NCBI RefSeq assembly: GCF_036365525.1
Contig: NC_090406.1
Span: forward strand, 5,765,394 to 5,829,393
Direction: 5' to 3'
From: Heterodontus francisci
Lineage: Eukaryota
DNA length: 64,000 bases
How positions within the stretch are numbered: position 1 is the first letter of the stretch; the number at the start of each line of letters is the position of its first letter. The notes under the pieces were generated by a model. The model was not told where the DNA came from, did not search any database, and saw only the letters and a list, made by a program, of their open reading frames with translations. A program made the position numbers and the translations under genes. Of the stretch, positions 2,149 through 61,500 are shown one piece after another.

Positions 2149-5100
2149 CATAGAAACATAGAAAACAGGAGCAGGAGTAGGCCATTTGGCCCTTCGAGCC
2201 TGCTCCGCCATTCATTATGATCATGGCTGATCATCCAACTCAGTAACCTGTTCCTGCTTTCGCCCCATATCATTTGATCCCTTTTGCCCCAAGAGCTTTA
2301 TCTAACTCCTTCTTGAAAACATACAATGTTTTGGCCTCAACTGCTTTCTGTGGTAGTGAATTCCACAGGTTCACCACTCTCTGGGTGAAGAAATTTCTCC
2401 TCATCTCAGCCCTGAAAGGTTTACCCCATATCCTTAGACTATGACCCCTGGTTCTGGACTCCCCACCATCGGGAACATCCTTCCTGCATCTACCCTGTCA
2501 AGTCCTGTTAGAATTTTATAGATTTCTATGAGATCCCCCCTCACTCATTTGAACCCCAACAAATATAATCCTAACCGACTCAATATCTCCTCATACGTCA
2601 GTCCTGCCATCCCAGGAATCAGTCTGGTAAACCTTCGCTGCACTCCCTCTATAGCAAGAACATCCTTCCTCAGATAAGGAGACCAAAACTGCACACAATA
2701 TTCCCGGTGTGGCCTCACCAAGGCCCTGTATAACTGCAGCAAGACATCCCTGCTCCTGTACTCGAATCTTCACGCTATGAAGGCCAACATACCATTTGCC
2801 TTTTTTACCGCCTGTTGCACCTGCATGCTTACCTTCAGCGACTGGTGTACGAGAACACCCAGGTCTCGCTGCATTTTTTTTTTCCCAAAATATACTTTAT
2901 TCATAAAAATCTGTAAAAATTACATTGCCAAACAGTTTCCAAACAGCACCAAAAAATACAAACATTGCAAGGGAGATCAGTTTCCTTCAATACTGTCATG
3001 AGTTTCTTCCCAACCCTTCCGTTTCACAATTGTCATGTCAATTACAGTTTTACATTTACAGCAATTCAGAATATTAACGATACAGTTCGAGGGGTTTCCC
3101 ATGGATCCAGCCCCTCAGTCCAGCTTGGTGGGGGAACCTTACACTGTGGTCTTTCCCCATTGAGCCTTTGCTGCGGCTGCCCCAAGCTTTAGTGCGTCCC
3201 TCAGCACGTAGTCCTGGACCTTGGAATGTGCCAGTCTGCAACATTCGGTGGTGGACAACTCTTTGCGCTGGAAGACCAGCAAGTTTCGGGCAGACCAAAG
3301 GGCGTCTTTCACCGAATTGATAGTCCTCCAGCAGCAGTTGATGTTTGTCTCGGTGTGCGTCCCTGGGAACAGCCCGTAGAGCACAGACTCCTGTGTTACA
3401 GAGCTGCTTGGGATGAACCTTGACAACAACCACTGCATCTCTTTCCACACCTGCTTTGCAAAGGCACATTCCAGGTCTCGCTGCATATTCCCCTCTCTCA
3501 GTTTATAGCCAGATAATAATCTGCCTTCCTGTTTTTGCTACCAAAGTGGATAACCTCACACTTAACCACATTATACTGCATCTGCCACGCATTTGCCCAC
3601 ACACTCAACTTGTCCAAATCACCCTGAAGCCTCTCTGCATCCTCCTCACAACTCACCCTCTCACCCAGTTTTGTGTCATCTGCAAATTTGGAGATATTAT
3701 ATTTAGTTCCCTCATCTAAATCATTAATGTATATTGTGAATAGCTGGGGTCCTAGCACCGTTCCCTGCGGTACCCCACTAGTCACTGCCTGCCATTCGGA
3801 AAAAGACCCATTTATCCCTACTCTGTTTCCTGTCTGCCAACCAATTTTCTATCCATCGCAATACACTACTCCCAATCCCATGCGCTTTAATTTTACACGC
3901 TAATCTCTTATGTGGGACTTTGTTGAAAGCCTTCTGAAAGTCCAAATAAACCACATTCACTGGCTCCCCCTCATCAACTCTACTAGTCACATCCTCGAAG
4001 AATTCTAGTAGATTTGTCAAGCATGATTTCCCTTTCGTAAATCCATGCTGACTCTGTCTGATTCTACCACTATTCTCTAAGTGCTCTGCTATAAAATCTT
4101 TGATAATGGACTCTAGAATTTTCCCCACTACTGACGTCAGGCTGACTGGTGTATAATTCCCTGCTTTCTCTCTACCTCCCTTTTTAAATAGTGGGGTTAC
4201 ATTAGCTACACTCCAATCTGTAGGAACTGTTCCAGAGTCTATGGAATCTTGAAAGATGACCACCAATGCATCCACTATTTCTAGGGCCACTTCCTTAAGT
4301 ACTCTGGGATGTAGATTATCAGGCTCTGGGGATTTATCGGCCCTCAATCCCATCAATTTCCCCAATAGCATTTCTCTACTAATACTGATTTCTTTCAGTT
4401 CCTCTCTCTCACTAAACCCTGTGTTCCCCAACATTTCTGGTATGATATTTGTGTCCTCCTTTGTGAAAACATAACCAAAGTATGTATTTAGTTGGTCAGC
4501 CATTTCTTTGTTCCCCATAATAAATTCCCCTGTTTCTGACTGTAAGGGACCTACATTTGTCTTCACCAATCTTTTTCTCTTCACATACCTACAGACACTT
4601 TTACAGTCAGTTTTCATGTTCCCTGCAAGCTTACTCTCGTACTCTATTTTCCCCTTCTTAATCAATCTCTTGGTCCTCCTTTGCTGAATTCTAAACTGCT
4701 CCCAATCCTCAGGTCTGTTGTTTTTCCTGGCAAATTTATATGCCTCTTCATTGGATCTATTGCTATCTCTAATTTCCCCTGTAAGCCATGGTTTGGCTAC
4801 CTTTCCCATTTTACTTTTGCGCCAGACAGGGATAAACAATTGTTGCAGTTCATCCATGTGCACTTTGAATGTTTGCCATTGCCTATCCACCGTCATCCCT
4901 TTAAGTAATGTTTCCCAATCCGTCATGGCCAACTCTTGCCTCATACCTTCGTAGTTTCCTTTATTAAGATTCAGGACCCTAGTCTCAGAATCAACTATGT
5001 CACTCTCCATCTTGATGAAGAATTCTATCATATTATGGTCGCTCATCCCCAAGGGATCTCGCACCAGTAGATTGTCAATTATTCCTCTCTCATTATACAA

Positions 5101-5770
5101 TACCCAGTCTAGGATGGCCCATCCCATATACACTCCAAGAATTCCTCTTCTACTGTATTGTGACTAATCTGCATATAGATTGGACAAATCAAATTAAAGT
5201 CACCCATAATTACAGATGTTCCTTTATCACATGCATCTCTAATTTCCTGTTTAATGCCATTCCCAACATCACCACTACAGTTTGGAGGTCTATATACAAC
5301 CCCCACTAACTTTTTTGCCCTTTAGTGTTTCTCAGCTCTACCCATACAGATTCCACATCGCCAGAGCTAATATCCTTCCTCACTATTGCATTAATTTCCT
5401 CTTTAACCAGCAATGCAATTCCACTGCATTCTACTTTTTGTCTGTCCTTCCTAAATACTGAATACCCCTGGAAGTTCATTTCCCATCCCTGGTCACCTTG
5501 CAGCCATTCTCCGTAATCCTGATTAGATCAGACCCGTTTACATCTATTTGCACGATTAATTCATCCACTTTATTGCAAATGTTCCACGCATTAAGGCACA
5601 AAGCCTTAAGGCTTGTCTTTTTAACATTACTTGTCCCCTTCCCACTATTTTTCACTGTGGCCCTGTTTGATTCTGGCCCTTGATTTCTCTGCCCATCACT
5701 TTTCTTATTCCCCTTACTGTCTTTTGTTTTTGTCTTTGATTGCCCCTCCTGACTCCTTGCAAAGGTTCCC
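2149..5770 (-). mobile_element. CR1-clade LINE (endonuclease-RT ORF2, degraded), interrupted by a Tx1 fragment
   Basis: ORFs 5476-5772 (CLNAWNI.NK), 5109-5306 (VYRPP, GDFN), 3778-5133 (DPLGMSDH, QHGF.KGKSC, DFQKAF), 3498-3785 (GVPQG, FADDT) and 2545-2742; CR1-type tail TTTTCTATGTTTCTATG on the minus strand at ~2149-2165. Confidence 0.93.
2875..3470 (-). mobile_element. 5'-truncated Tx1/L1-clade LINE 3' end nested in CR1
   Basis: Poly(T) at 2874-2883 followed by TTTATT; ORF 3139-3486 nearly identical to the C-terminus of ORF 6345-7526; TSD CCAGGTCTCGCTGCAT at 2859-2874 and 3471-3486. Confidence 0.93.
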
Positions 5771-5932
5771 ATTCACTCTGCATCTGCTCCACACTTCCTC
5801 CACATTCACTTCAAATCCACTCTGCACTCACTCTCAATCTAATGTGCATTCACTCCGCACACACTGTGCTCATTGACTGTCGTCTCATTTCCGCAAGGCT
5901 CTGCTACTTTGGTGATATTTCAGCCATTAGTG

Positions 5933-7785
5933 TCAGAATCCATGAGAAAAGGCATCATCACCCTCATCTACAAGCAGAAGGGGGAGAGGACAGAAATCAG
6001 AAATTGGCGGCCCATCTCACTGCTTAATGTTGACTACAAGATTCTGTCCAAAGTCGTCACCAGTCGGGTCAAGTCTGCTCTGGAGTTGGTGATCCACCCT
6101 GATCAGACCTGTACTCTACCCGGCAGGAAGATCTCTGATAGTCTCGAGCTACTCAGGGATACGATCGCCTATGTACGGGACAGGAGGGTGGACACCTGCC
6201 TCATCAGCCTGGACCAGGAGAAGGCTTTTGACAGGATATCGCACATATACATAATGGATGTGCTCTCCAAAATGGGGTTTGGGGAGGGAATCTGTAATTG
6301 GATCAAACTGCTCTACACAGACATAAGTAGCCCAGTCTTAATCAATGGGTGGAAATCAAAGTTTCCCGATCCAATCTGGAGTCAGACAGGGCTGTCCTCT
6401 CTCCCCTGTCTTGTTTGTTTGCTGTATTGAACCCTTTGCTGAGTCTATTAGGAAGGAAGCGAGCATCAGAGGGGTGACAATCCCAGGCAGTGGAGGCACT
6501 CAGGTTAAAACCTCCCTGTACATGGAGGACGTCGCCATCTTCTGCTCAGATCCACTGTCCGTTTGCAGACTGATGAGCATCTGCGACCAGTTCGAACTGG
6601 CCTCGGGAGCCAAAGTTAACCACGGCAACAGTGAGGCCATGTTCTTTGGGAACTGGGCTGACCGATCCTTTGTCCCCTTCACCGTCAGGTCAGACTACCT
6701 GAAGGTGCTGGGGATATGGTTCGGAAGGGCCGGGGTGTGCACCAAAACCTGGAAGGAGCGAGTAGCCAGGATACACCATAATCTGAACATGTGGGAGCAG
6801 CGATCTCTCTCCATTGTGGGTGAGAACCTGCCGCGGTACGCTTCATCCAGTTGGACCGTGCCGTACCACCTATCCTTCGTGGGAAAGTTTCTGCGGAAAA
6901 ACACCTTTGACCACCAATCCATCAGGCAGTGGTCTGCACGGAATGTCCTCAAGGCCCTACGGGAAAAGGAGATGGTGGATCCTGTCGGATGTTTCCCTGA
7001 GCAGACCGTCAAAGTCATTTGGCGGAATGCCTCATCACCAGAACTTTCAAACAAGCACCAAGATGTAGCTTGGCTGGTGGTGAGAAGAGCATTCCCTGTC
7101 AGATATTTTCTGCATGCCCGGAGTCTCACCCCCTCCGCACAATACCCTCGCGGGGGCTGTGCTGGGGAAGAGACGGTTGCCCACCTCCTCCTGGAATGTG
7201 TCTTTGCAAAGCAGGTGTGGAAAGAGATGCAGTGGTTTTTGTCGAGGTTCATCCCAAGCAGCTCTGTAACACAGGAGTCTGTGCTCTACGGGCTGTTCCC
7301 AGGGACGCACACCGAGATAAACATCAACTGCTGCTGGAGGACGATCAATTCGGTGAAAGATGCTCTTTGGTCTGCCCGAAACTTGCTGGTCTTCCAGCGC
7401 AAAGAGTTAACCATGGCCGAATGTTGCAGACCGGCACATTCCAAGGTCCAGGACTATGTGCTGAGGGACGCACTAAAGCTTGGGGCAGCCGCAGCAAAGG
7501 CTCAATGGGGAAAGACCACTGTGTAAGGTCCCCCCACCAAGCTGAACTGAGGGGCTAGACCCATGGGAAACTCTTCGGGTTGTATATACCAAATATGGGT
7601 TTGCTGCAAAATGTACATGGCATGTAAAATTAAATGGAAGGGTTGTGAGGCAACTCACTCCTGTATTGAAGGAAACTGATTTCCTTTGCACTTTGTATTG
7701 TTGACTGGGTACGGTTTTGAACTGTATTGTAATTTTTTTTTTTACAGAATTTTATGAATAAAGTATATTTTGGAAATAAAAAAAA
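5933..7785 (+). mobile_element. 5'-truncated Tx1/L1-clade LINE (RT plus C-terminal region), frameshifted and probably internally deleted
   Basis: WRPISLLNVDYKI, DQEKAFD, GVRQGCPLSP, YMED (degenerate YxDD) and ETVAHLLLEC; AATAAA plus poly(A) ending at 7785; 21-bp TSD GTGA(T/G)ATTTCAGCCATTAGTG at 5912-5932 and 7786-7806. Confidence 0.93.
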
Positions 7786-8456
7786 GTGAGATTTCAGCCA
7801 TTAGTGAGCATTTGGTGTAGAACAGCCCCACCTAGTGCCAGACACAGGGAATGCTGGAATTGCACAGCAAGCTCAACAGTGTTAATGGTTTCGAGTTTGG
7901 ACAGAGTGGGGGGAGGGTCAGTAACCCGAGGACAGATTTAAGAACCAGAGGGGAGATGAGGAGAGCTTTTTTTTTAAATGCAGTGAGTTGTTGTGATCTG
8001 GAATGCGCTGCCTGAAAGGGCAGTGGAAGCAGATTCAATAGTAACTTTCAACAGGGAATTCGACAAATACTTGAAAAGGAAACATTTGCAGGGCTGTGGG
8101 GAAAGAGCAGGGGAAAAGGGACTAATTGGAAAGCTCTTTCAAAGAGCCAGCACAAGCACACAGGGCCAAATGGCCTCCCTCTGTGCTGTATGATACAGAC
8201 CCCTAGAAAATAGGCAACATGTTTAGATAGAGGATCTGGATCGGCGCAGGCGTGGAGGGCCGAAGGGCCTGTTCCTGTGCTGTAATTTTCTTTGTTCTTT
8301 CTTTCTTTGTTCTATGATTCTGTATAGACTCTGTATCAGAACTGTGTGAACTGTAACACGCTCTGCCCTGTGCCTTATCCTGTGTGTAAGACCCACCCTC
8401 CTGGGTTTATGAAGCTCCTTTTATAAGCTTGAGACATACAGAAAAGAGATACTCAC

Positions 8457-14700: not shown

Positions 14701-17700
14701 TATCTGCAATATTGACTCTCTCTCTCCCCCTGTCTCTTGCCTTCGATCTGTCTCTCTGTTTCCTCCTGTCTCTCTGACCCAAAATCTTTCTTTAATGGTG
14801 TATAAAGGGCAGGGGTGTAACGAGCCATACGAATTTCTGCCCCCAAGAGACTTCGCACGGTTGTTTTTCATTTCCCGAGCGCTCTCACTTACAGTAAACT
14901 GTTAGAAAGACCTCCTTGCTGGAGAATTTTCCTGCACAGGTGATGGTGCATTTATAATCCGCCTCATACGCCTCCAGCACCTTGTCGATTCGTAGAAGCG
15001 TCTTGGAGTGGGAAGGAATCTCTTTTCCCGGTGCTAAGTCGATGGTTTTCTCCCATCTTGGCCGGCCACTCGGACACTGAGACACACATGTTAACTCCAC
15101 CGCCTCTCCGCTCTTTACAACAGGGGCTTCCGGGAAAATGAGCAGAATCTCTTCACTCACTGTCACAAGGACTGGAGAGAAAAAACATATTGAGCTTAGC
15201 CAATAAACCATCGAACACTTGAAAAATGGTGCTGGGAGTGTTTGATGGGGACAGTGTAGAGGGATCTTTACTCTGTATTTAACCCCCGTTTTTTTTTTCC
15301 TTTATTAAAACCAGAAACAAAACAAAACTCAAATTAAAATGCCATTCTCGGCGTTGACAATGCACTCCAGTCCCAGCGGTGCCCACCGGCTGCGGAAGGC
15401 CTCAAGCGTACCGGCAGACACCGCATGCTCCTTCTCCAGGGACACCCGGGCGCGAACATAACCGCGGAAGAGGGGCAGGCAATCGGGGAGGACGGACCCC
15501 CCGACGGCCCGCAGCCTGGACCTGTGAATTGCCACCTTGGCCAGAACCAGGAGCAGACCGATGAGGAGATCCTCCTCCCGGCCCAAGCCCCTCCGCACCG
15601 GGTGCCCAAAGATCAGGAGCGTGGGGCTGAAGTGCAGCCAGAACTTGAGGAGCAGCCCCTTCAGATACTCAAATAGGGGCTGCAACCTCGCACACTTCGT
15701 ATATATGTGAAACACGGACTCGTCCAGGCCACAGAAAGTACAGGCGGCCTGGGAATCCATGAACCTACTTAAAAGTCTATTGCACGGGACTGCTCTGTGC
15801 AGCACCGTCCACCCCAGGTCCCCGATGTAAAGAGGGAAGACTCCCGTGTAGAGAGACCTCCATCAGGGTTTCCCCTCGCCACCAGATGGCAACGCGGACC
15901 GCCAGGGCGTGTCGGGCCGGCTGACGAGGGCGAGGAAGTGGAAAGTGTGCAGGAGCAGCCCGTACAGGAAACCCCTCCATGCCGATTGGAATGGCACGGA
16001 GGGCCTTTCTGAGAGGCGGCTCTGGTTGTGCTGGACCGGCTCCTGAGGAGGGTTTCGGGGCCTGGGTCTGATGAGCAGTTCTGGCCGAACGGGGTTCAGC
16101 TCGGTCGGGAGCATTCCGCACTCGAGTCCCCTCGCCACCCGCAGTGAGGGGCGTCCCGGGGGTTTCGGCTACTCCTGCGCCCGGACAGCCGAGGCACTCA
16201 TCTCCGCCGGTGGGGGAGCACCCTGACTGGAGGCGACCATGTTCCAGACTCGGAATAGATCCCAGTAAAAGACAGGCAACTCCCTCAGAGAAGCGCGACT
16301 AACGGACTCCACCGGGAGCTGCGTGTCGTCTTGAAGGCAGTGACACTGGCAGAAAAAATACGTCGCCAGCGCACACCATCCAGGAGGACGCTTGACGTAC
16401 AGGTATCTCTGCAGGGTCCGAAGGCGGAGAGTCGCAGACTGGGTGCGGACGCACACCAGCAACTGGCCGCCCTCCTCGATCGGGAGACTCAGGACCGCGT
16501 CAGAGACCCAGTGTTTCCTCTTGCCCCAGAAGAAATCGACGAGTTTCTTCTGGATCTTGTTGGCAAATGCAGGGGGCGGGGCCAAAGTGACCAACCGGTA
16601 CCACAACATGGAGGCCACCAGTTGGTTTATGACCAGCGCTTGGCCCCTGCAGGAAAGCACTCGGAGCAGTCCTGTCCAGCGCCCCAGCCGAGCAATGACT
16701 TTCGCCTCCAACTCCTGCCAGTTTGCCGGCCAGGCTTCCTCAGCGGGGCCAAGGTGGACTCCCAGATAGAGGAGGTGCGTGGTGCTCCACGCAAAAGGTG
16801 TCATCTCCTCCGGCAGGGAGTCCACCCGCCACTGACCCACCAGGAGTCCGGAACATTTCTCCCAATTGATCCTCGTGGAGGACGCGGCAGAAAAAGTCTG
16901 CTGGCAGATGCGCATCCTCCGCAAGTAAACAGGATCTGTGACCGCGAGGAGCACATCATCGGGTAAGCCGATAGGACAACCCGCATGGCCGGCTCGCGCA
17001 GAGCCAATCCCGTCAACCTCCTGCGAAGCAGGCACAGGAAGGGCTCCACGCAGATGGTATACAATTGGCCGGACATGGGGCATCCCTGACGCAATCCTTT
17101 CCCAAAGCGAAGGGGCGCCGTCAAGGACCCATTAACTTTGACTAGACACTCTGCGGCGGCGTATAAAAGTCAGACCCGGGCCACGAAATGCGGCCCGAGT
17201 CCGAAAGCGCGCAGAGTCCCGAAAAGGTATTCGTGATCCACCCTGTCGAACGCCTTCTCCTGATCGAGGGAGAGAAAGGCGACCGACTGACCAGTCCTCT
17301 GGGAAAGATGGATCAGGTCCCGGACCAGGTGGATGTTGTCCTGGATGGACCGGCCCGGGACCGTGTAGGACTGGTCAGGGTGGATCATGTGGGCCAGCAC
17401 GGAGCCCAGGCGGGTAGACATAGCCCGGGCAAAGATCTTATAATCCGTGCTGAGGAGGGAGACCGGATGCCAGTTTTTAAGCAGGCGGAGATCGCCCCTC
17501 TTTGGCAGCAGGACGATGACCGCCCTGCGCCATGAAAGGGGCATCTCCCCCAGGACCCGCGCGAAATCGTCCCCCAGGACATCCCAGAATGCCCTGAGGA
17601 ACTCCACGGTCAACCCATCCAGCCCTGGGGATTTGCCCCTCGAGGGCTGGTGGAGGGCGCCAGTCAGCTCCGCCACGTAAGCGGAGCCTCCAATTCTTCG

Positions 17701-20700
17701 GCGCTCTCCGGGCTGACCTGCAGCAGGTCCTCCCACAAAACTCTGCGCGCATCCTCGCTGGACGGATCCGGAGAGAACAACGCACTGTAATAAGTACGGA
17801 CCAGGAGGCCCATTCCCTCCGGATCCGTGATGGAGGATCCGCCGTCGGCCAGCAGCTCAACGAGCTGCTTACGGACCCCCCGCCATTTTTCCAGCGAGTA
17901 GAAGAAGGGTGAGGCGCGGTCCAAATCTTCCAGGATCTGGATCCGCGACCTCACGTACGCGCCTCGGGACCCTATGAGCTGCAGGTCCCTCAGCGCGCCC
18001 TTTTTCTCTTTGTACGCCTGCCACAGGGCTGGGTCCGCGATGGCATGACCGAGGCGGGACTCCAAGTCGAGCACCTCCCTCTCTAGGCGTCCGATCTCGG
18101 CTTCCCGCCTCTTGGTCGACCCCTTCGCGTACTCCTGACAGAAGACGCGGATGTGAGTCTTGCCCACATCCCACCATAGCCTCAAGGAGGGGAAGCCCCC
18201 CTGCTTCCTTCTCCAGTCGGCCCAGAATCGACAGAACGAGTCCCGAAATCGCACGTCCTCCAGCAGCCGGTTGTCAAAGTGCCAGTACGCGGACCCCGCC
18301 CGCGTGCGTGGCAGAGTGAACTCCGCCCACACCAGGTGGTGGTCCGAGCACGGCACCAGCCACATGGAGGCCGCCGAGACACGGGAGACGTACGCCTGCG
18401 AAATGTAGAGGCGGTCGATTCGGGACCCTCCTCCTCCAGACCTCCACGTGAAGGCGCTGGAGTCAGGATGGAGATTCTGCCAGACGTCCACCAAGTTAAG
18501 GGAGCTGATCAGTCCCCTCAACTTCTCCACCGACGCTTGGCCGCGCTGGGGACCGGAATGATCCCCCACCTCGAGGGTGCAGTTAAAATACCCCCCGAGG
18601 ATGATGCACTCGCCGCTATCAATGGAGCTCAAGAGAGCGGACACTTCTTCAAAGAAGCACGCTTGCAACGCGCCGGGCCTGGGCGCGTACACGTTCACAA
18701 AGTGGAGCGGCACGCTACCCAGGCGAACGGCGAGGTGGAGCAAGCGGCCCGGCACTAGCTCCTTGACCCCCAAGATCTCCGGCTGAAAAGTCGGGGCCAA
18801 CAAGATAGCCACCCCAATAGAAATAGGGGTGAGGTGACTCATGTAGACCCCATCCTGCCATTCCAGGAGCCAGGTGGCTTCGTCTCCCGGAACGGTGTGG
18901 GTTTCCTGCAGAAAGCTCACCGCGTATCTCCCTTCCCTGAGGACTGAGAGATTGTGAAATCTGCGGTGAGACCCCCTGCTGCCGTTGATGTCGAGGCTGG
19001 CTATGGTTATCTTCATGTCAAAAGTACTTAAAACCCATCACCAACAGCTCACTGTGAGGAGGGAGTGGAAGTGTACCTGGCCTTCCACTCCCCCAGCAAC
19101 CCATTGAGGAACACATTAAAACAGCGCCTCTAAACCAGTTTCACGCCCGCGTGCTTGCCCGCTTTCTTCAGGGCGGCACGGACGGACTGTATGATCAGCG
19201 CCAGATTCGACCAACGGCCGAGGGCCAGCTGAACTTTATCGCAGCAACCCCTGCAAGCTGCGAGGAAATCCCGGAGTTCCGCCGTGGGGATGAGAGGAGA
19301 TTCGGTGGGAGGCACGAGGGACTCCACCACCTCACTGGCGATGGAATCAAGGTCATCCTCCTTGCCCCACACCGAATCCCCATCCTCCTCCGGGTCGTCA
19401 CCGCCAGCGGCCGACACATCCACCACACATTGTGGGGCGGACGTCCCGGCCGCGCCAGCTGATCCCGCCGTCACGATCCCACCCATAGGATCGATGGTGG
19501 AGGAGTCCTCTCTGGTTTCTATTGTGAAACTGGAGCCTGTGGGCGCCAGCAGCTCAGGACCCCCCTCCACCTCCGTCCCCAGGCCAATGAGTGGTCCAAG
19601 GGAGACAGAAGTACCCGACTCCGGAAATCCAGCTGGAGCCGAGACTTGAGGCGGAGAGAGGAGGCCATCTCCCGCTCCGCCAGCACCCACAGACCCAGCA
19701 GATGGGGCAGCATTCTCGGTTATAACCGGGTCGGGTGTCTCCTGGTTGGTGGTGGACTCCGGCTGGGAGGGCCGACCCTTTGGGACCCCGCCCTCCCCTC
19801 TACTCAGGGCACCCGACCCAGTGGCAGTGGCAGAATGGGCGGCGTCCCCAGGCTCCCCCATCACAAGCAGGGCTCCACTGGCTTCCCCCGGAGGGGCCAC
19901 ATGTACAGGTGTCTCCCCCTCTCCTCCATCCTGAGGAATAGGGAGCTCCTGCTCAGACTTTGCAGCCTTGATGTTGGTGGTGGTGGTAAGGGGAACCTGA
20001 GGACCCAAAACAGGAGACAGCTCCCCTCCAACAGATGGACCCTGCACCTCAGGGCCCCTCGTTACCTCTGTGGAGGGGTGCCTTCTCCTCTTTTTCCCAC
20101 TAGGGCGCAGAGGCTCAGAGACCTCCATGTCATCAGAGGCCTCCGCACCCTCCTTTTTTTTTTAGTCACCCTAGGCCTGAGCCCAGCCCTAGGACAGGTG
20201 GATTCCGTGAGAACAGGCTTTGGGCTGAGCTCAGGCTCAGGTTGTTTCAATGTGTCCAGGGGACGCACCTCTTGATGTTTCTTTTGCCTCCGCGTCTTCG
20301 TTCCACTCGGACGGGCACTCCCTTCCCTGCTGAAGGCTGTGAAAACTACAGCCTCCGTTGGATGTGTGGGGGGAGTGGGAGGAGGTGCTGTGGAACCACC
20401 CTGGGCCGCCGAGGTGGAGCTGGCAGCCGGGAGGTTGGAGCAGTTCTTACGAACATGCCCCACGCCCTTGCAGATGTGGCACCGCGCCCCGTCCGAGGTC
20501 CAAAAGACGCGGTAGGCCGTCCTCTGGAAATCCACATTAAATTGGCCCTCCGAGACCTCCTCCCGCGCCAGCTGCATAAATAGCTGGCGGCGGAAGGAGT
20601 AGACATTCCGGAGGCTGTTAGCCCGAAGACCGAGCGGGACTGGGGTGATCCCCGACCTCACCTCCCCCAGATGGTGCAGGTGGGGGAGGAGGAGCTCACT

Positions 20701-23700
20701 GGGAATGAAGGGCGGGACATTGGACAACAATATCCGCTGCGCAGTGGCCCCCAGAGGATCCACAGGCAGGAAGGTCCCCCCCACACTGAGCCCCTTACTC
20801 AGGGCCACGGACACGGCCCACTCGGTCTTTAGAAAAAACACAGCCTTCCCATACATCTTTGAGGCCGCAACAATGGCCGAGGGGCCGATAACCTCGGCCA
20901 TTGCCTTCACACAGGCCTCAATGGACATGTTGGGATGGGGATAGCTCTTCACCCCATGGCTGGATGTTATTAATTTAAAGGGTGACGGGGCCACGTGGGC
21001 AACCACAGAGGCTGCAGCTGCATAGGTAGTAGAGGGCCCCGCCACCTGTGATGAAGGGCTTGCCATGGGTCTGAGAGCTAAACCCACCCCCAATTGTAGG
21101 CTTGAAAATAACTTTAAGATGCACAAAACAAACAAACAACAGGTTAGGGGAGAGGCTGAGGGAATAGAGCAGAGGGAAAGACAGACTGGAAGGGATGACT
21201 TTCTTTTCCTTTCTGGAGGTGGTGCACACAGCACACTTGAAACAGTCTCTGCCAGCACACTTGGTATTCCGGTCTTCTGGTTGGGGGAGGCGTCTTCACC
21301 TGGGTCAGCTGAAGCTGCCCAGGCACTATTTATCCCCTTCTGTATATTAGCCGGGTCCAGCCCGCCCCCCCCTCGCACCATCTTCACCCCGCACCCCCTT
21401 CCCCTGCACCCCCCCCCCCACCCCCTCCCTCTACCCCTCCCCCTTGCATCCCCTCCTCCCACCGGCACCATCCTACACCTGTGTAGGGGCCCCAACAACC
21501 CCACTGCCTTGTGGGCGTCTCGGGAGAGACCAAGGCTAAGGGAGTAAACCCTAACAGAAAATCCGGAGCGGAACCCCGTAGGCGGTCATGTGTCACCTTT
21601 GGCATGTTTCCGGCAGTTCCTGCAGCCATACTGGTGCCAAACGTCGTGTCCTGCACTCCTTTGGACCCCACCAGAAAGGCCGAGAGGGGGGTTTTGACGA
21701 CTGGGCAACTCTCAACCTCCATAAATTTGCCCAGGCATGCGCCATGGAGAGGTCACTCCATATCACAAACCACTGACCACCTCCAGGCGCGTATCCATTG
21801 TCTCTCGAGATAAGGAGGCCCAAAAGAAAGAATATTAGCCGGGCAGCTTCAGCTGACTCAGGCTGGGCAATTGGGGTGGGGAGGGAGCTTCCCTGCAACT
21901 TTAGTGCAACGGCACAGCTCCACCCACTTGTTGTTCCGGCCTCTTCCACCTCCCACAACAGTCCAAATGAAATAAGAGTCTGGTGCTCAACACCCACCTC
22001 GAAATACAAGCTTATTCCAAAAGTCTTTCCTCCTCTGCAGCAAAAGTTGTTCAAAGTTTTTGCAGTTTCTCCTCAGCATTCCTTCTCCAGCAGCACCTCC
22101 AGCAACTGACTGCAGCAGTCAGCTGCACCTCGTTGATGCACTTTGGCATCCCAATTAGGAAGCAGCCAACCCCTGTGCTGTACCTGTCCTGGAAGTGTTT
22201 GATGGGGACAGTGTAGAGGGAGCTTTACTCTGTATCTAACCCCTGTTTTTTTTTATTGGCAAGTTCGTTTTATTTACAAAAATGGAGCATCACAAAAATT
22301 TGCTTCTCCCATGTGAAGACAGTAGAAAGTTGTCCCCCGTTTTTTTTTTAGCTTTACTCTGTATCTAACCCCCGTTTTTTTTTTTTTTTCTTTTTTTCTA
22401 ACCCCCGTGCTGTACCTGTCCTGGGGAGTGTTTGATGGGGGACAGTGCAGAGGGAACTTTACTCTGTATCTAACCCCCGTGCTGTACCTGTCCTGGGAGT
22501 GTTTGATGTGGACAGTGTAGAGGGAGCTTTACTCTGCATTTAACATCTTTGCAGTGTTCACATGTAGCCTTGTTGGTTTATTAAAGGAGAGGAAGTTTGT
22601 TCGGGTTTATTTGCATGCAATTATCGTGAGCTTATTTATCAGAAATATGAATCCACAGAACCAGGGAAGTTTTGAGCACAGCAGGAGGCCGTTCATGACA
22701 TGGCTGCTCTTTGCTAGCTAGAATTTTCCAAAGCTGGTCCCATTGCCCTCGTCTCTCCCCATAGCCCTGTAATGTAGTCTGCTTCAAATATTTCACAATT
22801 TTCCTTCAAAAGCAGCAATGGTCTCTATCTCAACCACCCACAGAAGCAAAGCATTCCATGTTCCAAAAACTTGAGTAAATACATTTTCTGTAATCTCTCG
22901 CCTCACAGTTTTAAATTGATAATCCTCTTGTCACTGACTCCCCAACCAATGGAAAACATACACACTCTATCAAAATTCAAGTCCCCTCATTGGTAGAGTT
23001 TTCCATCCCTGGTGTCATCCTAGTGTCCAACCTTTTCACGTGCGGGGCCACATTACAATTATTGTCCTACATAAGGGGCCAGTGAGCAAATTTCAGAAAG
23101 ACTATCAATCAAAACATTGTTCTCACCTCCCTTGTCTCAGTATTCTCATTACCACCGTCCCCCCGCCCACCCGTCTCAGTATTCTCATTACCACTGTCCC
23201 CCCACCCGTCTCAGCATTCTCATTACCACCGACCCCCCGCCCACCCGTCTCAGCATTCTCATTACCACCGACCCCCCGCCCACCCGTCTCAGCATTCTCA
23301 TTACCACCGACCCCCCGCCCACCCGTCTCAGCATTCTCATTACCACCGACCCCCCGCCCACCCGTCTCAGCATTCTCATTACCACCGACCCCCCGCCCAC
23401 CCGTCTCAGCATTCTCATTACCACCGTCCCCCCACCCATCCCCTGCACATTCTCACCTCCACCCGCCCCCATCAGCACCAATTGACAACACCGAATTGGT
23501 GGGCTGGATCGAACACACAAACTAGGAGTAGGACATTCGGCCCCTTAAGCCTGCTCCGCCATTCTAGAATATCATGGCTGTTCTGTTTGAGGACTCAACT
23601 CCACTTTCCTGCCTACCCCCGAAACCCTTTGACTCCCTTGTTTGTCAAGAATCTGTCTACCTCTGCCTTAAAAACATTCAATGACCCTGCCTCCACCGCT

Positions 23701-26866: not shown

Positions 26867-27992
26867 GTTCAAATCCTCTGAAGAAGGAATTTTCCTCCAC
26901 ACAAGATCAGGGGGCAGGTTGTTCAACCTTGCCCGTCTAAGAGCGAAGTCCAAAGTACGGAAAGTCCTCATCAGAGAACTCCTCTTTGCTGACGATGCTG
27001 CTTTAACATCTCACACTGAAGAATGCCTGCAGAGTCTCATCGACAGGTTTGCGTCTGCCTGCAATGAATTTGGCCTAACCATCAGCCTCAAGAAAACGAA
27101 CATCATGGGGCAGGATGTCAGAAATGCTCCATCCATCAATATTGGCGACCACGCTCTGGAAGTGGTTCAAGAGTTCACCTACCTAGGCTCAACTATCACC
27201 AGTAACCTGTCTCTAGATGCAGAAATCAACAAGCGCATGGGTAAGGCTTCCACTGCTATGTTCAGACTGGCCAAGAGAGTGTGGGAAAATGGCGCACTGA
27301 CACGGAACACAAAAGTCCGAGTGTATCAGGCCTGTGTCCTCAGTACCTTGCTCTACGGCAGCGAGGCCTGGACAACGTATGCCAGCCAAGAGCGACGTCT
27401 CAATTCATTCCATCTTCGCTGCCTTCGGAGAATACTTGGCATCAGGTGGCAGGACTATATCTCCAACACAGAAGTCCTTGAAGCGGCCAACATCCCCAGC
27501 TTATACACACTACTGAGTCAGCGGCGCTTGAGATGGCTTGGCCATGTGAGCCGCATGGAAGATGGCAGGATCCCCAAAGACACATTGTACAGCGAGCTCG
27601 CCACTGGTATCAGACCCACCGGCCGTCCATGTCTCCGTTATAAAGACGTCTGCAAACGCGACATGAAATCGTGTGACATTGATCACAAGTCGTGGGAGTC
27701 AGTTGCCAGCATTCGCCAGAGCTGGCGGGCAGCCATAAAGACAGGGCTAAATTGTGGCGAGTCGAAGAGACTTAGTAGTTGGCAGGAAAAAAGACAGAGG
27801 CGCAAGGGGAGAGCCAACTGTGCAACAGCCCCAACAAACAAATTTCTCTGCAGCACCTGTGGAAGAGCCTGTTACTCCAGAATTGGCCTTTATAGCCACT
27901 CCAGGCGCTGCTTCACAAACCACTGACCACCTCCAGGCGCGTATCCATTGTCTCTCGAGATAAGGAGGCCCAAAAGAAAAAGAAGAAAAAGA
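26867..27992 (+). mobile_element. 5'-truncated RTE-clade LINE with uninterrupted RT C-terminal ORF
   Basis: ORF to 27926 with LLFADD, FTYLGS, LLYGSEAW, RRLRWLGHV and terminal C2H2-like CSTC..H; GAA-rich tail; TSD ACATAGTAAC at 26857-26866 and 27993-28002. Confidence 0.95.
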
Positions 27993-58500: not shown

Positions 58501-61500
58501 GCCTGATAATCTACATCAGAGTACTTAAGGAAGTGGCCCTAGAAATAGTGGATGCATTGGTGGTCATCGTCCAAGATTCTACAGACTCTGGAACAGTTCC
58601 TACAGATTGGAGTGTAGCTAATGTAACTCCACTATTTAAAAAGGGAGGTAGAGAGAAAACAGGGAATTATAGACCAGTCAGCCAGACGTCAGTAGTGGGG
58701 AAAAATTCTAGAGTCCATATCAAAGATTTTATAGCAGAGAACTTAGAGAACAGTGGTAGAAACGGGCAGTCAGCATGGATTTATGAAAGGGAAATCATGC
58801 TTGACAAATCTACTAGAATTCTTTGAGGGTGTAACTAGTAGAGCTGATGAGGGGGAGCCAGTGGATGTGTTTATTTGGACTTTCAGAAGGCTTTCGACAA
58901 ACTCCCACATAAGAGATTAGCGTGTAAAATTAAAGCGCATGGGACTGGGGGCAGTGTAATGCGATGGATAGAAAATTAGTTGGCAGACAGGAAACAAACA
59001 GTAGGAATAAACGGGTCTTTTTCCGAATGGCAGGCAGTGACTAGTGGCGTACCGCAGGGATCGGTGCTAGGACCCCAGCTATTCACAATATACATTAATG
59101 ATTTAGATGAGGGAACTAAATGTAATATCTCCAAATTTGCAGATGACACAAAACTGGGTGGGAGGGAGAGTTGTGAGGAGGATGCAGAGGCGCTGCAGGG
59201 TGATTTGGACAAGTTGAGTGAGCAGGCAAATGCATGGCAGATGCAGTATAATGTGGATAAATGTGAGGTTATCCACTTTGGTAGCAAAAACAGGAAGGCA
59301 GATTATCTGAATGGCTATAAACTGAAAGAGGGGAATATACAAGACCCGGGTGTTCTCGTACACCAGTCGTTGAAGGTAAGCATGCAGGTGCAACAGGCAG
59401 TAAAAAAAAAAAGCAAATGGTATGTTGACCTTCATAGCAAGAGGATTTGAGTCAAGGAGCAGGGATGTCTTGCTGCAATTATACAGAGCCTTGGTGAGGC
59501 CACACCTGGAATAGATTGCAGAGTTTTGGTCTCCTTATCTGAGGAAGGATGTTCTTGCTATAGAGGGAGTGCAGTGAAGGTTTACCAGACTGATTCCTGG
59601 GATGGTGGGTCTGATGTATGAGAAGAGATTGAGTCGGTTAGGATTATATTCGCTGCAGTTCAGAAGAGTGAGGGGGGATCTCATAGAAACCTATAAAATT
59701 CTAACAAGATGCAGGAAGGATGTTCCCGATGGTGCTGGGGGTGGGGGGGTACTCCAGAACCAAGGTCATAGTCTAAGGATACGGGGTAAACCTTTCAGGA
59801 ATGAGATGAGGAGAAATTTCTTCACCCAGAGAGTGGTGAGCCTGTGGAATTCGCTACCACAGAAAGCAGTTGAGGTCAAAACATTGTGTGTTTTCAAGGA
59901 GTTAGATATAGCTCTTGGGGCAAAAGGGATCAAAGGATATGGGGGGAAAGCGGGAACAGGCTACTGAGTTGGATGATCAGCCATGATCATAATGAATGGT
60001 GGAGCAGGCTTGAAAGGCCTACTCCTGCTTCTATTTTCTATGTTTCTTTGTAACAGCCTCTGGTATGAAGACTAACTCTCTTACACTTAACTAGTACCTG
60101 TAAAATTTTTTTTAATTCATTCATGGGATGTGGGCATTGCTGGCCAGGACAGCATTTATTGCCCATCCCTAATTGCCCTTGAAAAGGTGGTGGTGAGCTG
60201 TCTTCTTGAACCACTGCAGTCCATGGGAGGTATGTACATCCACAGTGCTGTTAGGAAGGGAGTTCCAGGATTCTGATCCAGCGGCAGTGAAGGAACGGCG
60301 ATATAGTTCCAAGTCAGGATGGTGTGTGGCTTGGAGGAGAACTTGCAGGTGGTGATGTTCCCATGCATTTGCTACCCTTGTCCTTCTAGTTAGTAGAGGT
60401 CGACGGTTTGGAAGGTGCTGTCTAAAGAGCCTTGGGGCGTTGCTGCAGTGCATCTTGTAGATGGTACACACTGTTGCCACTGTGCGTCGATGGTGGAGGG
60501 AGTAAATGTTTGTGGATGGTGTGCCAATCAAGCGGCTGCTTTGCCCTGGCTGGTGTCGAGCTTCTTGAGTGTTGTTGGAGCTGCATCCATCCAGGCAAGT
60601 GGAGAGTATTCCATCACACTTCTGACTTGTGCCTTGTCGATGGTGGACAGGCTTTGAGGAATCAGGAGGTGAGTTACTTGACACAGGATTCCTAGCCTCT
60701 GACCTGCTCTTGTAGCCACGGTATTTATATGGCTACTCCAGTTCAGTTTCTGGCCAATGGTAGTCCCTAGGGTGTTGATAGTGGGGGAATTCAGCAATGG
60801 TAATGCCATTGAATGCCAAGGGAAGATGGTTACATTCTCTCTTGTTGGAGATGACCATCGCCTGGCACTTGTGTGGTGCGAATGTTACTTGCCACCTTTC
60901 AGTCCAAGCCTGGATATTGCCCAGGTCTTATTGCATTTCTGCATGGACTGCTTCAGTATCTGAGGAGTTGCGGATGGTGCTGAATAATCAGCGAACATCC
61001 CCACTTCTGACCTTATGATTGAAGGAAGTAAATGTAACTAAACATTTCTAACATAATCTCAGAAAGGTGATGGACTGGGAGCAGGATTTGGGAGAAGAGT
61101 TGAGGGAGATGGCCTAAGGTACACGTAAGAGATATTTTGCTGCCCTTGTGTTGATAATAATATACAGCTTTTCGAGGCTTATGACGACTTAGTTTAATTT
61201 AGTTGATTATACTGGTTAAGTATAAACACTGACTGTGCAGCAGCTTTGGAACACAAGGTCTGTGCCCTAACACACCATGCCACAGACTTGGCATGCAACT
61301 GTGCCGTCCCGTTTCCCTGGTGAATTTTCCATTTCAGCCACATTATCTGTGGACAGGTGTGAGTGAGTACAAGTCAGTTACGTTTCCCAGTGAAGGAAGG
61401 AGAGGCAGGGGATAAAATAGGAGCAACAGCTACCTTTAGTGATTCTGGTATGGCATCAGCCTGGGAGCAGATCACCCATCTACACAGTGAGAAGGGGAAT

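What the first reader, a model, noticed from the sequence alone, without database searches (positions are those of the whole stretch)
15231..22544. Four poly(A)-tailed insertions at one position of a ~70-bp tandem repeat: candidate sequence-specific Tx1 system
Seen: a short array of ~70-bp units is interrupted four times, always directly after ...AACCCC(C/T)G and always in the same orientation (poly-T first on +). (a) Full-length Tx1 at 15289-22167, TSD AACCCC(C/T)G. (b) T9 plus 79 nt at 22246-22333, TSD CCCC(C/T)G. (c) T10 at 22340-22349, TSD 25 bp AGCTTTACTCTGTATCTAACCCCCG. (d) T15CT7 at 22375-22397, TSD CTAACCCCCG. The poly(A)-side junction is fixed and the TSD length varies. Known: Tx1-clade APE endonucleases are often target-specific (Xenopus Tx1L/Tx2L into repeats within Tx1D/Tx2D; Keno into U2 snDNA; Kibi/Koshi into microsatellites). 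Inference: this Tx1 family targets this repeat with a precise first nick and a variable second nick. I do not know of this target having been described. The other Tx1 family here (2875, 5933) has unrelated TSDs and serves as an internal non-specific control.
Basis: partly seen in the sequence, partly recalled or inferred. Interest (0 to 1): 0.85.

Follow-up and report, generated by a model that had tools for sequence, protein, structure and literature searches.

The report
Site-specific shark LINE in 70-bp repeat
A dead copy of a jumping gene and three short poly(A)-tailed stubs all sit at exactly the same nucleotide of a 70-bp repeat in this (horn) shark genome, which is the known target-specific habit of Tx1-type retrotransposons, here with a target I could not find described.

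Summary
A four-unit array of a 70-nt repeat (15233-15288 and 22168-22547) carries four poly(A)-tailed insertions. All are in one orientation, and each T-run starts right after CCCC(C/T)G. The target-site duplications are 8, 6, 25 and 10 bp. By chance this has P of about 1e-10.

Insertion (a) is a 6.9-kb non-LTR retrotransposon with ORF1 (one CCHC knuckle), an APE endonuclease and a reverse transcriptase. This copy is dead. Insertion (b) looks like an mRNA 3' end. Insertions (c) and (d) are poly(A) only.

Every possible order of nesting requires at least one nick at a CCCCCG^poly-T junction. Recognition therefore lies on the ...CTAACCCCCG side, and each insertion regenerates the site.

Reads show that unit and element are highly multicopy in this species and present in two others. 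One contig from another species has unit, poly-T, then unit again with a 48-nt duplication.

I could not test the Tx1 label against a named reference.

The scan has noted the same thing on at least 12 other pieces of this genome, one of them followed up.

Verdict: a real, site-specific LINE and a new member of a known kind. Interest is moderate.

The parts
15233..15288 (+). Partial repeat unit u0 (unit positions ~15-70). Its last 8 nt (15281-15288, AACCCCCG) are the poly(A)-side copy of the duplication for (a).
   Evidence: Reads of satellite copies start to fit at 15232-15234.
15289..15298 (-). Poly(A) tail (A10) of element (a).
15299..22167 (-). Body of the 6.9-kb non-LTR retrotransposon (a). 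It is 60% G+C against 46% for the window. This copy is dead.
15329..15805 (-). ORF2 C-terminal piece with a CX2CX7HX4C motif. The stop codon lies about 30 nt before the poly(A).
16963..17709 (-). Reverse-transcriptase core (Pfam RVT_1), interrupted by an in-frame stop and by frame changes at about 17690 and 16961.
17664..19016 (-). APE-type endonuclease plus linker (Pfam PF03372). The nearest solved structure is human L1 ORF2p. This copy reads GYFN where seven relatives read GDFN.
19130..21504 (-). ORF1, about 790 aa in two frames, with one CX2CX4HX4C zinc knuckle at residue 342 of the first piece.
22168..22175 (+). 5'-side copy of the duplication for (a), AACCCCTG.
22176..22245 (+). Unit u1. 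Its last 25 nt are the left copy of the duplication for (c), and its last 6 nt the left copy for (b).
22246..22333 (-). (b): 79 nt plus A9. AATAAA lies 14 nt before the tail. It is unlike the element's 3' end and has no other copy in the window. It is most likely a 5'-truncated retrocopy of a polyadenylated RNA.
22334..22339 (+). Right copy of the 6-nt duplication for (b), CCCCCG.
22340..22349 (-). (c): poly(A)-only insertion (A10).
22350..22374 (+). Right copy of the 25-nt duplication for (c). Its last 10 nt are the left copy for (d).
22375..22397 (-). (d): poly(A)-only insertion (A7GA15).
22398..22407 (+). Right copy of the 10-nt duplication for (d), CTAACCCCCG.
22408..22547 (+). Units u3 (22408-22478) and u4 (22479-22547, with a degenerate end). 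The boundary between them is unoccupied.
5927..7786 (+). Control: a 5'-truncated copy of another poly(A) LINE family (43% identical in the RT). Its duplication GA(T/G)ATTTCAGCCATTAGTG is unrelated to the repeat unit. A second copy of that family ends at 2874 on the minus strand.

Best explanation
A family of APE-endonuclease/reverse-transcriptase LINEs (L1/Tx1 type) inserts by target-primed reverse transcription at one position of a 70-nt tandem repeat.

Shown by the sequence:
- The primed strand is always cut at 5'-...TCTAACCCC(C/T)G^T-3' (window + strand).
- The other strand is cut 6 to 25 nt away (48 nt in a contig from another species), which gives duplications of variable length.
- The new DNA always begins with a poly(A) tail.

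Inferred:
- The endonuclease, or another DNA-binding part of ORF2p, reads mainly the ...CTAACCCCCG side of the nick. Every nesting order that reproduces the observed arrangement requires insertion (b), at least, to have been primed at a CCCCCG^T10 junction, where the native downstream sequence was already gone.
- Targeting is done by the protein, not by RNA-to-target pairing. The primer end has no T-run, and a foreign polyadenylated RNA (b) and bare poly(A) (c, d) landed at the same nucleotide.
- The template is chosen through its poly(A) tail, as in mammalian L1. Cellular mRNAs are therefore occasionally inserted in trans, and reverse transcription that aborts early leaves poly(A)-only scars.
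- Each event keeps the recognised side next to its own tail and, with a long duplication, makes a second full site. Occupied boundaries therefore stay targets and insertions stack.

The copy in this window is itself inactive.
For: - Four junctions at the same nucleotide and in the same orientation, with duplications of 8, 6, 25 and 10 nt; chance P about 1.7e-10.
- Nesting logic was worked out from the sequence. Only the orders c->b,d and d->c->b reproduce the arrangement.
- The element encodes PF03372 and RVT_1 domains, with human L1 ORF2p as the nearest solved structure. Relatives keep the catalytic motifs.
- (b) has AATAAA 14 nt before its tail and no similarity to the element.
- Raw reads of the same species give depth 0 on the unique flank, about 750-1150 on the element's 3' kb and about 3950 on the unit. 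Both are also present in two other species.
- One contig of organism B joins 15298 back to 15241. That is unit, poly-T, then unit again, with a 48-nt duplication.
- A second poly(A) LINE family in the same window sits in unrelated flanks.
- Tx1-clade families are documented as target-specific, satellites are among their listed targets, and they are inferred to mobilise other RNAs to the same target (PMC4494074).
- Unchecked leads: at least 12 notes on other pieces of this genome describe the same junction.
Against: - I have only one full element of this family with both flanks.
- The genome-wide share of copies in this target was not measured.
- Read depth falls from about 750 at 15355 to 131 at 15314, so most family members have a different 3' UTR and their junctions were not seen.
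- Nothing links (b)-(d) to this family's proteins except the shared site.
- The clade label was not tested against a named Tx1 sequence.
- Endonuclease specificity is inferred, not assayed.
Confidence: 0.85

Rival explanations
1. The repeat has a fragile or host-nicked site, for example a structure-prone C5/G5 run or a recurrent break. Any active LINE reverse transcriptase uses it, so the specificity belongs to the DNA and not to this element's endonuclease.
For: Three different kinds of insert (LINE, foreign RNA 3' end, bare poly(A)) share the site. No assay ties the nick to this endonuclease.
Against: All four events have clean duplications and one orientation, as expected for two staggered enzymatic nicks; endonuclease-independent insertions usually lack them (established knowledge for L1). 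The other poly(A) LINE family in the window is not in the array. (b) was primed at CCCCCG^T10 after the native neighbour was replaced, so a structure needing the whole unit junction is unlikely.
Confidence: 0.07
2. There was one ancestral insertion, later multiplied by unequal crossing-over or replication slippage within the array. The four events would then not be independent, and the specificity would be an illusion.
For: The array is tandem and short. (b), (c) and (d) lie within 160 bp of each other at one boundary.
Against: The four inserts differ in content (6.9 kb, 79 nt, A10, A7GA15) and in duplication length (8, 6, 25, 10). Recombination would copy both junctions unchanged. The same junction type appears in a contig of another species with a different, 48-nt duplication.
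Confidence: 0.03
3. This is an ordinary, non-specific L1-like element that landed here by chance, followed by secondary L1-type insertions attracted to the A/T-rich tail already present.
For: L1-type endonucleases favour T-rich sites, and nested insertions into poly(A) tails are common (established knowledge). In every order, (b) used a site next to a T-run.
Against: The duplications start with CGGGGG (element sense), not with A-runs. The cut is at the G/T border, not inside the T-run. (a) lies at a different unit boundary that had no earlier tail, yet at the same nucleotide.
Confidence: 0.05

Closest known systems
Xenopus laevis Tx1L/Tx2L (Tx1 clade), inserted at one site of a repeat inside the Tx1D/Tx2D DNA transposons
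   Same: Both are APE-endonuclease plus RT LINEs with a long ORF1. Both insert at a single position of an internally repeated sequence, with a target-site duplication and one orientation. The endonuclease is held responsible for target choice (PMC4494074, citing Christensen et al. 2000).
   Different: Here the target is a free 70-nt tandem repeat flanked by single-copy DNA, not a repeat inside a DNA transposon. The target sequence is different. Duplication length varies from 6 to 25 (48) nt here. Kinship to Tx1L was not tested, because no named reference was reachable.
Tx1-Mar families and SINEU of crocodilians (Kojima 2015, PMC4494074)
   Same: A target-preferring Tx1 group and non-autonomous RNAs share the same insertion sites, from which trans-mobilisation is inferred. 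The same logic applies to (b)-(d) here.
   Different: The target there is a Mariner transposon, with preferred regions rather than one nucleotide. The passengers are snRNA-headed SINEs, not an mRNA-like 3' end or bare poly(A).
Keno, Kibi, Koshi, Mutsu, Dewa and other target-specific Tx1-clade families (Kojima and Fujiwara 2004, as cited in PMC4494074); that paper's Fig. 3 legend also lists satellite-targeting Tx1 families
   Same: They show sequence-specific integration into multicopy sequences (snRNA genes, microsatellites, satellites).
   Different: The targets differ. None of the held papers describes a cartilaginous-fish family or this 70-nt unit.
Mammalian L1
   Same: It is the nearest solved structure. 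It shares the poly(A) tail and a C-terminal CX2CX7HX4C motif. It also chooses templates loosely through poly(A), which yields processed pseudogenes (PMC3747384).
   Different: L1 cuts degenerate TTTT/AA sites all over the genome, and its duplications start A-rich. Here the cut is at one G/T border of one repeat.
R1-clade telomere or rDNA specialists (TRAS1, SART1, R1)
   Same: They have an APE-type endonuclease with strict sequence specificity for a tandem repeat. The target here contains GGGTTAG, one telomere-like unit.
   Different: They belong to a different clade. SART1 needs its own 3' UTR (PMC3747384), whereas here foreign poly(A) RNAs seem to be accepted. The single telomere-like heptamer is probably a coincidence.

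Membership tests
Non-LTR retrotransposon with APE endonuclease and RT (L1/Tx1 superfamily) | N-terminal apurinic-like endonuclease domain in ORF2 | tested here: met
   PF03372, E = 3e-10. It aligns over 228 residues to the human L1 endonuclease, E about 1e-16 to 1e-19. QETH, YAP, SRID and SDH motifs are present. This copy has Y in place of D in GDFN, while seven relatives keep D.
Non-LTR retrotransposon with APE endonuclease and RT (L1/Tx1 superfamily) | Reverse transcriptase downstream of the endonuclease in the same ORF, followed by a Cys/His motif | tested here: met
   RVT_1, E = 4.5e-18. Homologues are collinear over 19010-15335 in three frames. CX2CX7HX4C is present.
Non-LTR retrotransposon with APE endonuclease and RT (L1/Tx1 superfamily) | Poly(A) 3' end, target-site duplication and no terminal repeats | tested here: met
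   A10 tail and a 7/8-matching 8-nt duplication. No internal or terminal repeat of the element was found by self-BLAST.
Tx1 clade | RT domain clusters with Xenopus Tx1L in a phylogeny (the RTclass1-type criterion used in PMC4494074) | not testable with these tools
   None of the hits listed from three word-index searches (174 proteins), and none of the 10 hits of the exhaustive search whose names I looked up, carries a Tx1 name. The length window excluded 1308-aa references. The earlier follow-up note s1-872051 calls the family close to Tx1L, but I did not check that.
Tx1 clade | Long ORF1 of gag type | tested here: inconclusive
   ORF1 is about 790 aa in two frames, with one CCHC knuckle, a weak Pfam zf-CCHC hit (E = 0.11) and CCHC-type look-alikes in the Atlas. 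My recollection that Tx1L ORF1 is about 82 kDa comes from memory only.
Target-specific non-LTR retrotransposon (Kojima's working criterion) | More than 20% of the family's flanks are the same sequence | tested here: inconclusive
   In this window, one of one family copy and three stubs are at the site, and one contig of another species agrees. Unchecked notes report the same at 12 or more other loci.

The most novel reading that the evidence does not exclude
The ORF2 protein of this family is strict about its DNA target but loose about its RNA template. The 70-nt satellite would then act as a genome-wide sink that collects retrocopies of host mRNAs and poly(A) scars at one nucleotide. Each event would regenerate or duplicate the site, with partial-unit duplications of up to 25-48 nt, so the element would help remodel and extend its own target array. 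That would be a natural system in which processed pseudogenes are written to a defined address.
Probability: 0.4. Interest if true: 0.6.

Novelty: new member of a known kind. Interest (0 to 1): 0.5.

Why it matters
Target-specific LINEs show how an apurinic-type endonuclease can be turned into a sequence-specific one. They are also of practical interest as natural RNA-templated tools that write DNA at a defined site. This family offers a well-defined 10-25-nt recognition side and a single-nucleotide first nick. It also appears to keep its site specificity while accepting foreign polyadenylated RNAs. It is abundant in an elasmobranch, with relatives in skates, rays and turtles. For genome annotation it explains many poly-T interruptions and retrocopies inside this shark satellite. 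It also explains gene models that contain pieces of the element.

Tried and rejected
- Read laying on the 3' junction. It gave copy-number and cross-species information but not the wanted count of element-to-unit junctions, because only the best-supported loose ends are listed. Two single-contig AT-rich loose ends in organism B (15295, 15304) look like short spurious matches and are not evidence of other flanks.
- The search for related loci with an ORF2 C-terminal alignment found no relatives in metagenome or viral contigs.
- Unit patterns gave only chance hits: one in metagenome contigs (L001) and two in phage contigs (L002, L003). There were none in prokaryotic genomes.
- Three homologue searches, one exhaustive search, one cluster look-up and two Atlas look-ups gave no protein named Tx1.
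- Rfam: the unit is not recognisably derived from a snRNA, tRNA or 5S gene.
- Searches for (b) and for further units elsewhere in the window found nothing.
- Paper searches for a shark Tx1 target or a shark satellite found nothing relevant. PMC85248 (the Tx1L endonuclease paper) is not held.
- The search of earlier findings by sequence was blank.
Full report
**What is there.** On the + strand, single-copy DNA ends at about 15232. A partial repeat unit follows (15233-15288) and ends in AACCCCCG.

Next come T10 and 6.87 kb of a retroelement on the minus strand (15289-22167), then AACCCCTG (22168-22175) and the rest of the array. The remaining layout is:
- unit u1 (22176-22245);
- T9 plus 79 nt (22246-22333);
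- CCCCCG;
- T10 (22340-22349);
- a 25-nt repeat of the end of u1 (22350-22374);
- T15CT7 (22375-22397);
- CTAACCCCCG (22398-22407);
- units u3 and u4 (22408-22547);
- unrelated DNA.

The unit occurs nowhere else in the window. Before the insertions, the array was only four units long with three internal boundaries. One boundary holds (a), one holds (b), (c) and (d), and one is empty.

**Is it more than chance?** The window has 14 T-runs and 16 A-runs of 8 nt or more. Four T-runs directly follow CCCC(C/T)G, and all four are in the array. With 41 such hexamers in 64 kb the binomial probability is 1.7e-10. Requiring the same phase and orientation for three further events gives 3.6e-7. The duplications match 7/8, 5/6, 24/25 and 10/10. 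All three mismatches are C/T at the CpG, at two physical positions (b and c share the one at 22244), which fits decay after insertion. Unit similarity starts at 15233 rather than 15231.

**The element.**
- Minus-strand pieces give PF03372 (endonuclease, 17664-19016) and RVT_1 (17170-17736).
- Homologues align collinearly from 19010 to 15335, but in three frames with an in-frame stop.
- The copy reads GYFN and DHSG where seven relatives read GDFN and DR(S/T/N) (mostly DRSG). This copy is therefore dead.
- Its 1.1-kb 3' part differs from nearly all reads of the family at 40 or more positions, mostly transitions.
- ORF1 is about 790 aa in two frames with one CCHC knuckle. ORF2 ends with CX2CX7HX4C.
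- The nearest solved structures are human L1 ORF2p and its endonuclease.
- The closest protein is an annotated 'uncharacterized protein' of Heterodontus francisci, 89-92% identical.
- Pieces 63-76% identical are embedded in gene models of a skate, a manta and a sawfish. Sea turtles and a tortoise have relatives at 45-65%.
- No hit carries a Tx1 name, and the length limits of the word search exclude the 1308-aa frog protein. The Tx1 clade label therefore stays untested here. L1/Tx1-superfamily membership is met.

**The three stubs.** In element sense, (b) reads 79 nt ending ...GTAAATAAAACGAACTTGCCAAT plus A9. It has an AATAAA signal 14 nt before the tail, no long ORF, no likeness to the element's 3' end and no other copy in the window. 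It is best read as a 5'-truncated retrocopy of some polyadenylated RNA. (c) and (d) are tails only (A10 and A7GA15).

**Order of events and what it says about recognition (inference).** Only two orders reproduce the arrangement. Either (c) came first, then (b) into the left copy and (d) into the right copy of its 25-nt duplication. Or the order was (d), then (c), then (b), each into the leftmost copy.

In both orders (b) was primed at CCCCCG^T10, where the native neighbour TGCTGTACC had already been replaced by a tail. The determinants must therefore lie mainly on the ...CTAACCCCCG side of the nick. That is the side that ends up next to the poly(A) and inside the duplication.

Two consequences follow. 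Every insertion keeps a usable site beside its own tail. A long duplication also creates a second complete site, which explains the stacking.

The primer end (...CCCCCG, or ...CCCCCGT given the 1-nt ambiguity) cannot pair with a poly(A) tail beyond one base. Foreign RNAs landed at the same nucleotide. Targeting is therefore a property of the protein, and template choice is probably through poly(A), as in L1 (PMC3747384).

**Evidence from reads.** In raw reads of the same species (a capture library) the unique flank has depth 0. The unit has about 3950 and the element's 3' kb about 750-1150.

In contigs of the likely source sample, summed word depth is 5.8 on the flank. It is about 25,000-220,000 on the element and 270,000-520,000 on the unit. 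The tool warns that this is not a copy number, but both are clearly very abundant.

Most reads leaving the unit at 15285-15289 run on into the next unit, so it is an ordinary tandem repeat. Two of the loose-end consensi there (X9 at 15285, X1 at 15286) are low-agreement mixtures with an obvious T-run component. That hints at many poly-T junctions after CCCC(T)G elsewhere, but it is only a hint.

Both the unit and the element occur in two other species. One contig of organism B joins 15298 back to 15241. That is unit, poly-T, then unit again from 48 nt upstream: a tail-only insertion at the same nucleotide with another duplication length.

The number I wanted was not obtainable, namely the share of element 3' ends that continue into the unit. 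Depth drops to 131-239 at 15314-15323, which means the 3' UTR subfamilies differ.

**Internal control.** A second poly(A) LINE family is 43% identical in the RT. It has one copy at 5927-7786 with an unrelated ~18-nt duplication, and another ending at 2874 next to CTCGCTGCA. Poly(A) LINEs in this genome are therefore not all drawn to the repeat.

**What is known.** The Tx1 clade is one of the three main groups of target-specific non-LTR elements (PMC4640811). Its targets include DNA transposons, snRNA and 5S genes, microsatellites and satellites. Shared target preference has already been used to infer trans-mobilisation of SINEU by Tx1-Mar (PMC4494074). The behaviour here is thus of a known kind. 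I found no held paper on a cartilaginous-fish family or on this unit. The unit has no Rfam relative.

**Earlier findings of this scan.** The scan has noted the same phenomenon on at least 12 other pieces of this genome. These include retrocopies of IFITM, RPL37 and RPL19 at the site. One follow-up reached the same verdict. Those are unchecked leads, not my evidence.

**Verdict.** It is a new member of a known kind.

The points I add are:
- the nesting argument that places recognition on the duplicated side and explains stacking;
- the dead state of this copy;
- the cross-species tail-only junction;
- the statistics.

Still open are the genome-wide flank logo, the clade tree, the source of (b) and a nicking assay.

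An assay with a naturally intact copy would serve the same purpose.

Noticed in passing
window 21763-21829 and 27913-27979: A 67-bp stretch in the element's 5' region is 100% identical, in the same orientation, to a stretch 6 kb away. The flanks are unrelated, and the second copy is followed by AAGAAAAAG repeats. Family copies differ by 5-10%, so perfect identity is odd. It could be a small mobile piece or a recent conversion.
   Followed up: partly
window 23134-23438: A tandem array of a 39-bp C-rich unit, 7.9 copies at 94% identity, lies 600 bp beyond the 70-nt array.
   Followed up: no
window 2874-5133 (minus) and 5927-7786 (plus): Two copies of another poly(A) LINE family lie head to head. 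The plus copy is 5'-truncated, with an ~18-bp duplication GA(T/G)ATTTCAGCCATTAGTG. The RT at 3778-5133 (minus) is only about 22-25% identical to the turtle proteins, so it may belong to a third element.
   Followed up: partly
window 58557-59156 (+): A further, distant reverse-transcriptase fragment, 25% identical to the tortoise protein P0023.
   Followed up: no
proteins P0175, P0033, P0016, P0020: Public gene models appear to contain pieces of this LINE lineage. Examples are Heterodontus francisci XP_067877586.1, Amblyraja radiata 'zinc finger protein 830', Mobula birostris 'EH domain-containing protein 2-like' and Pristis pectinata 'FAM169B'. In P0175 the endonuclease is fused to a long low-complexity tail. 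These are likely annotation artefacts.
   Followed up: partly
window 15233-15288; read laying joints: About 360 raw reads show a unit variant that joins position 15260 back to 15234, a 27-nt internal step. This suggests a common subfamily of the satellite with a partial internal duplication.
   Followed up: no
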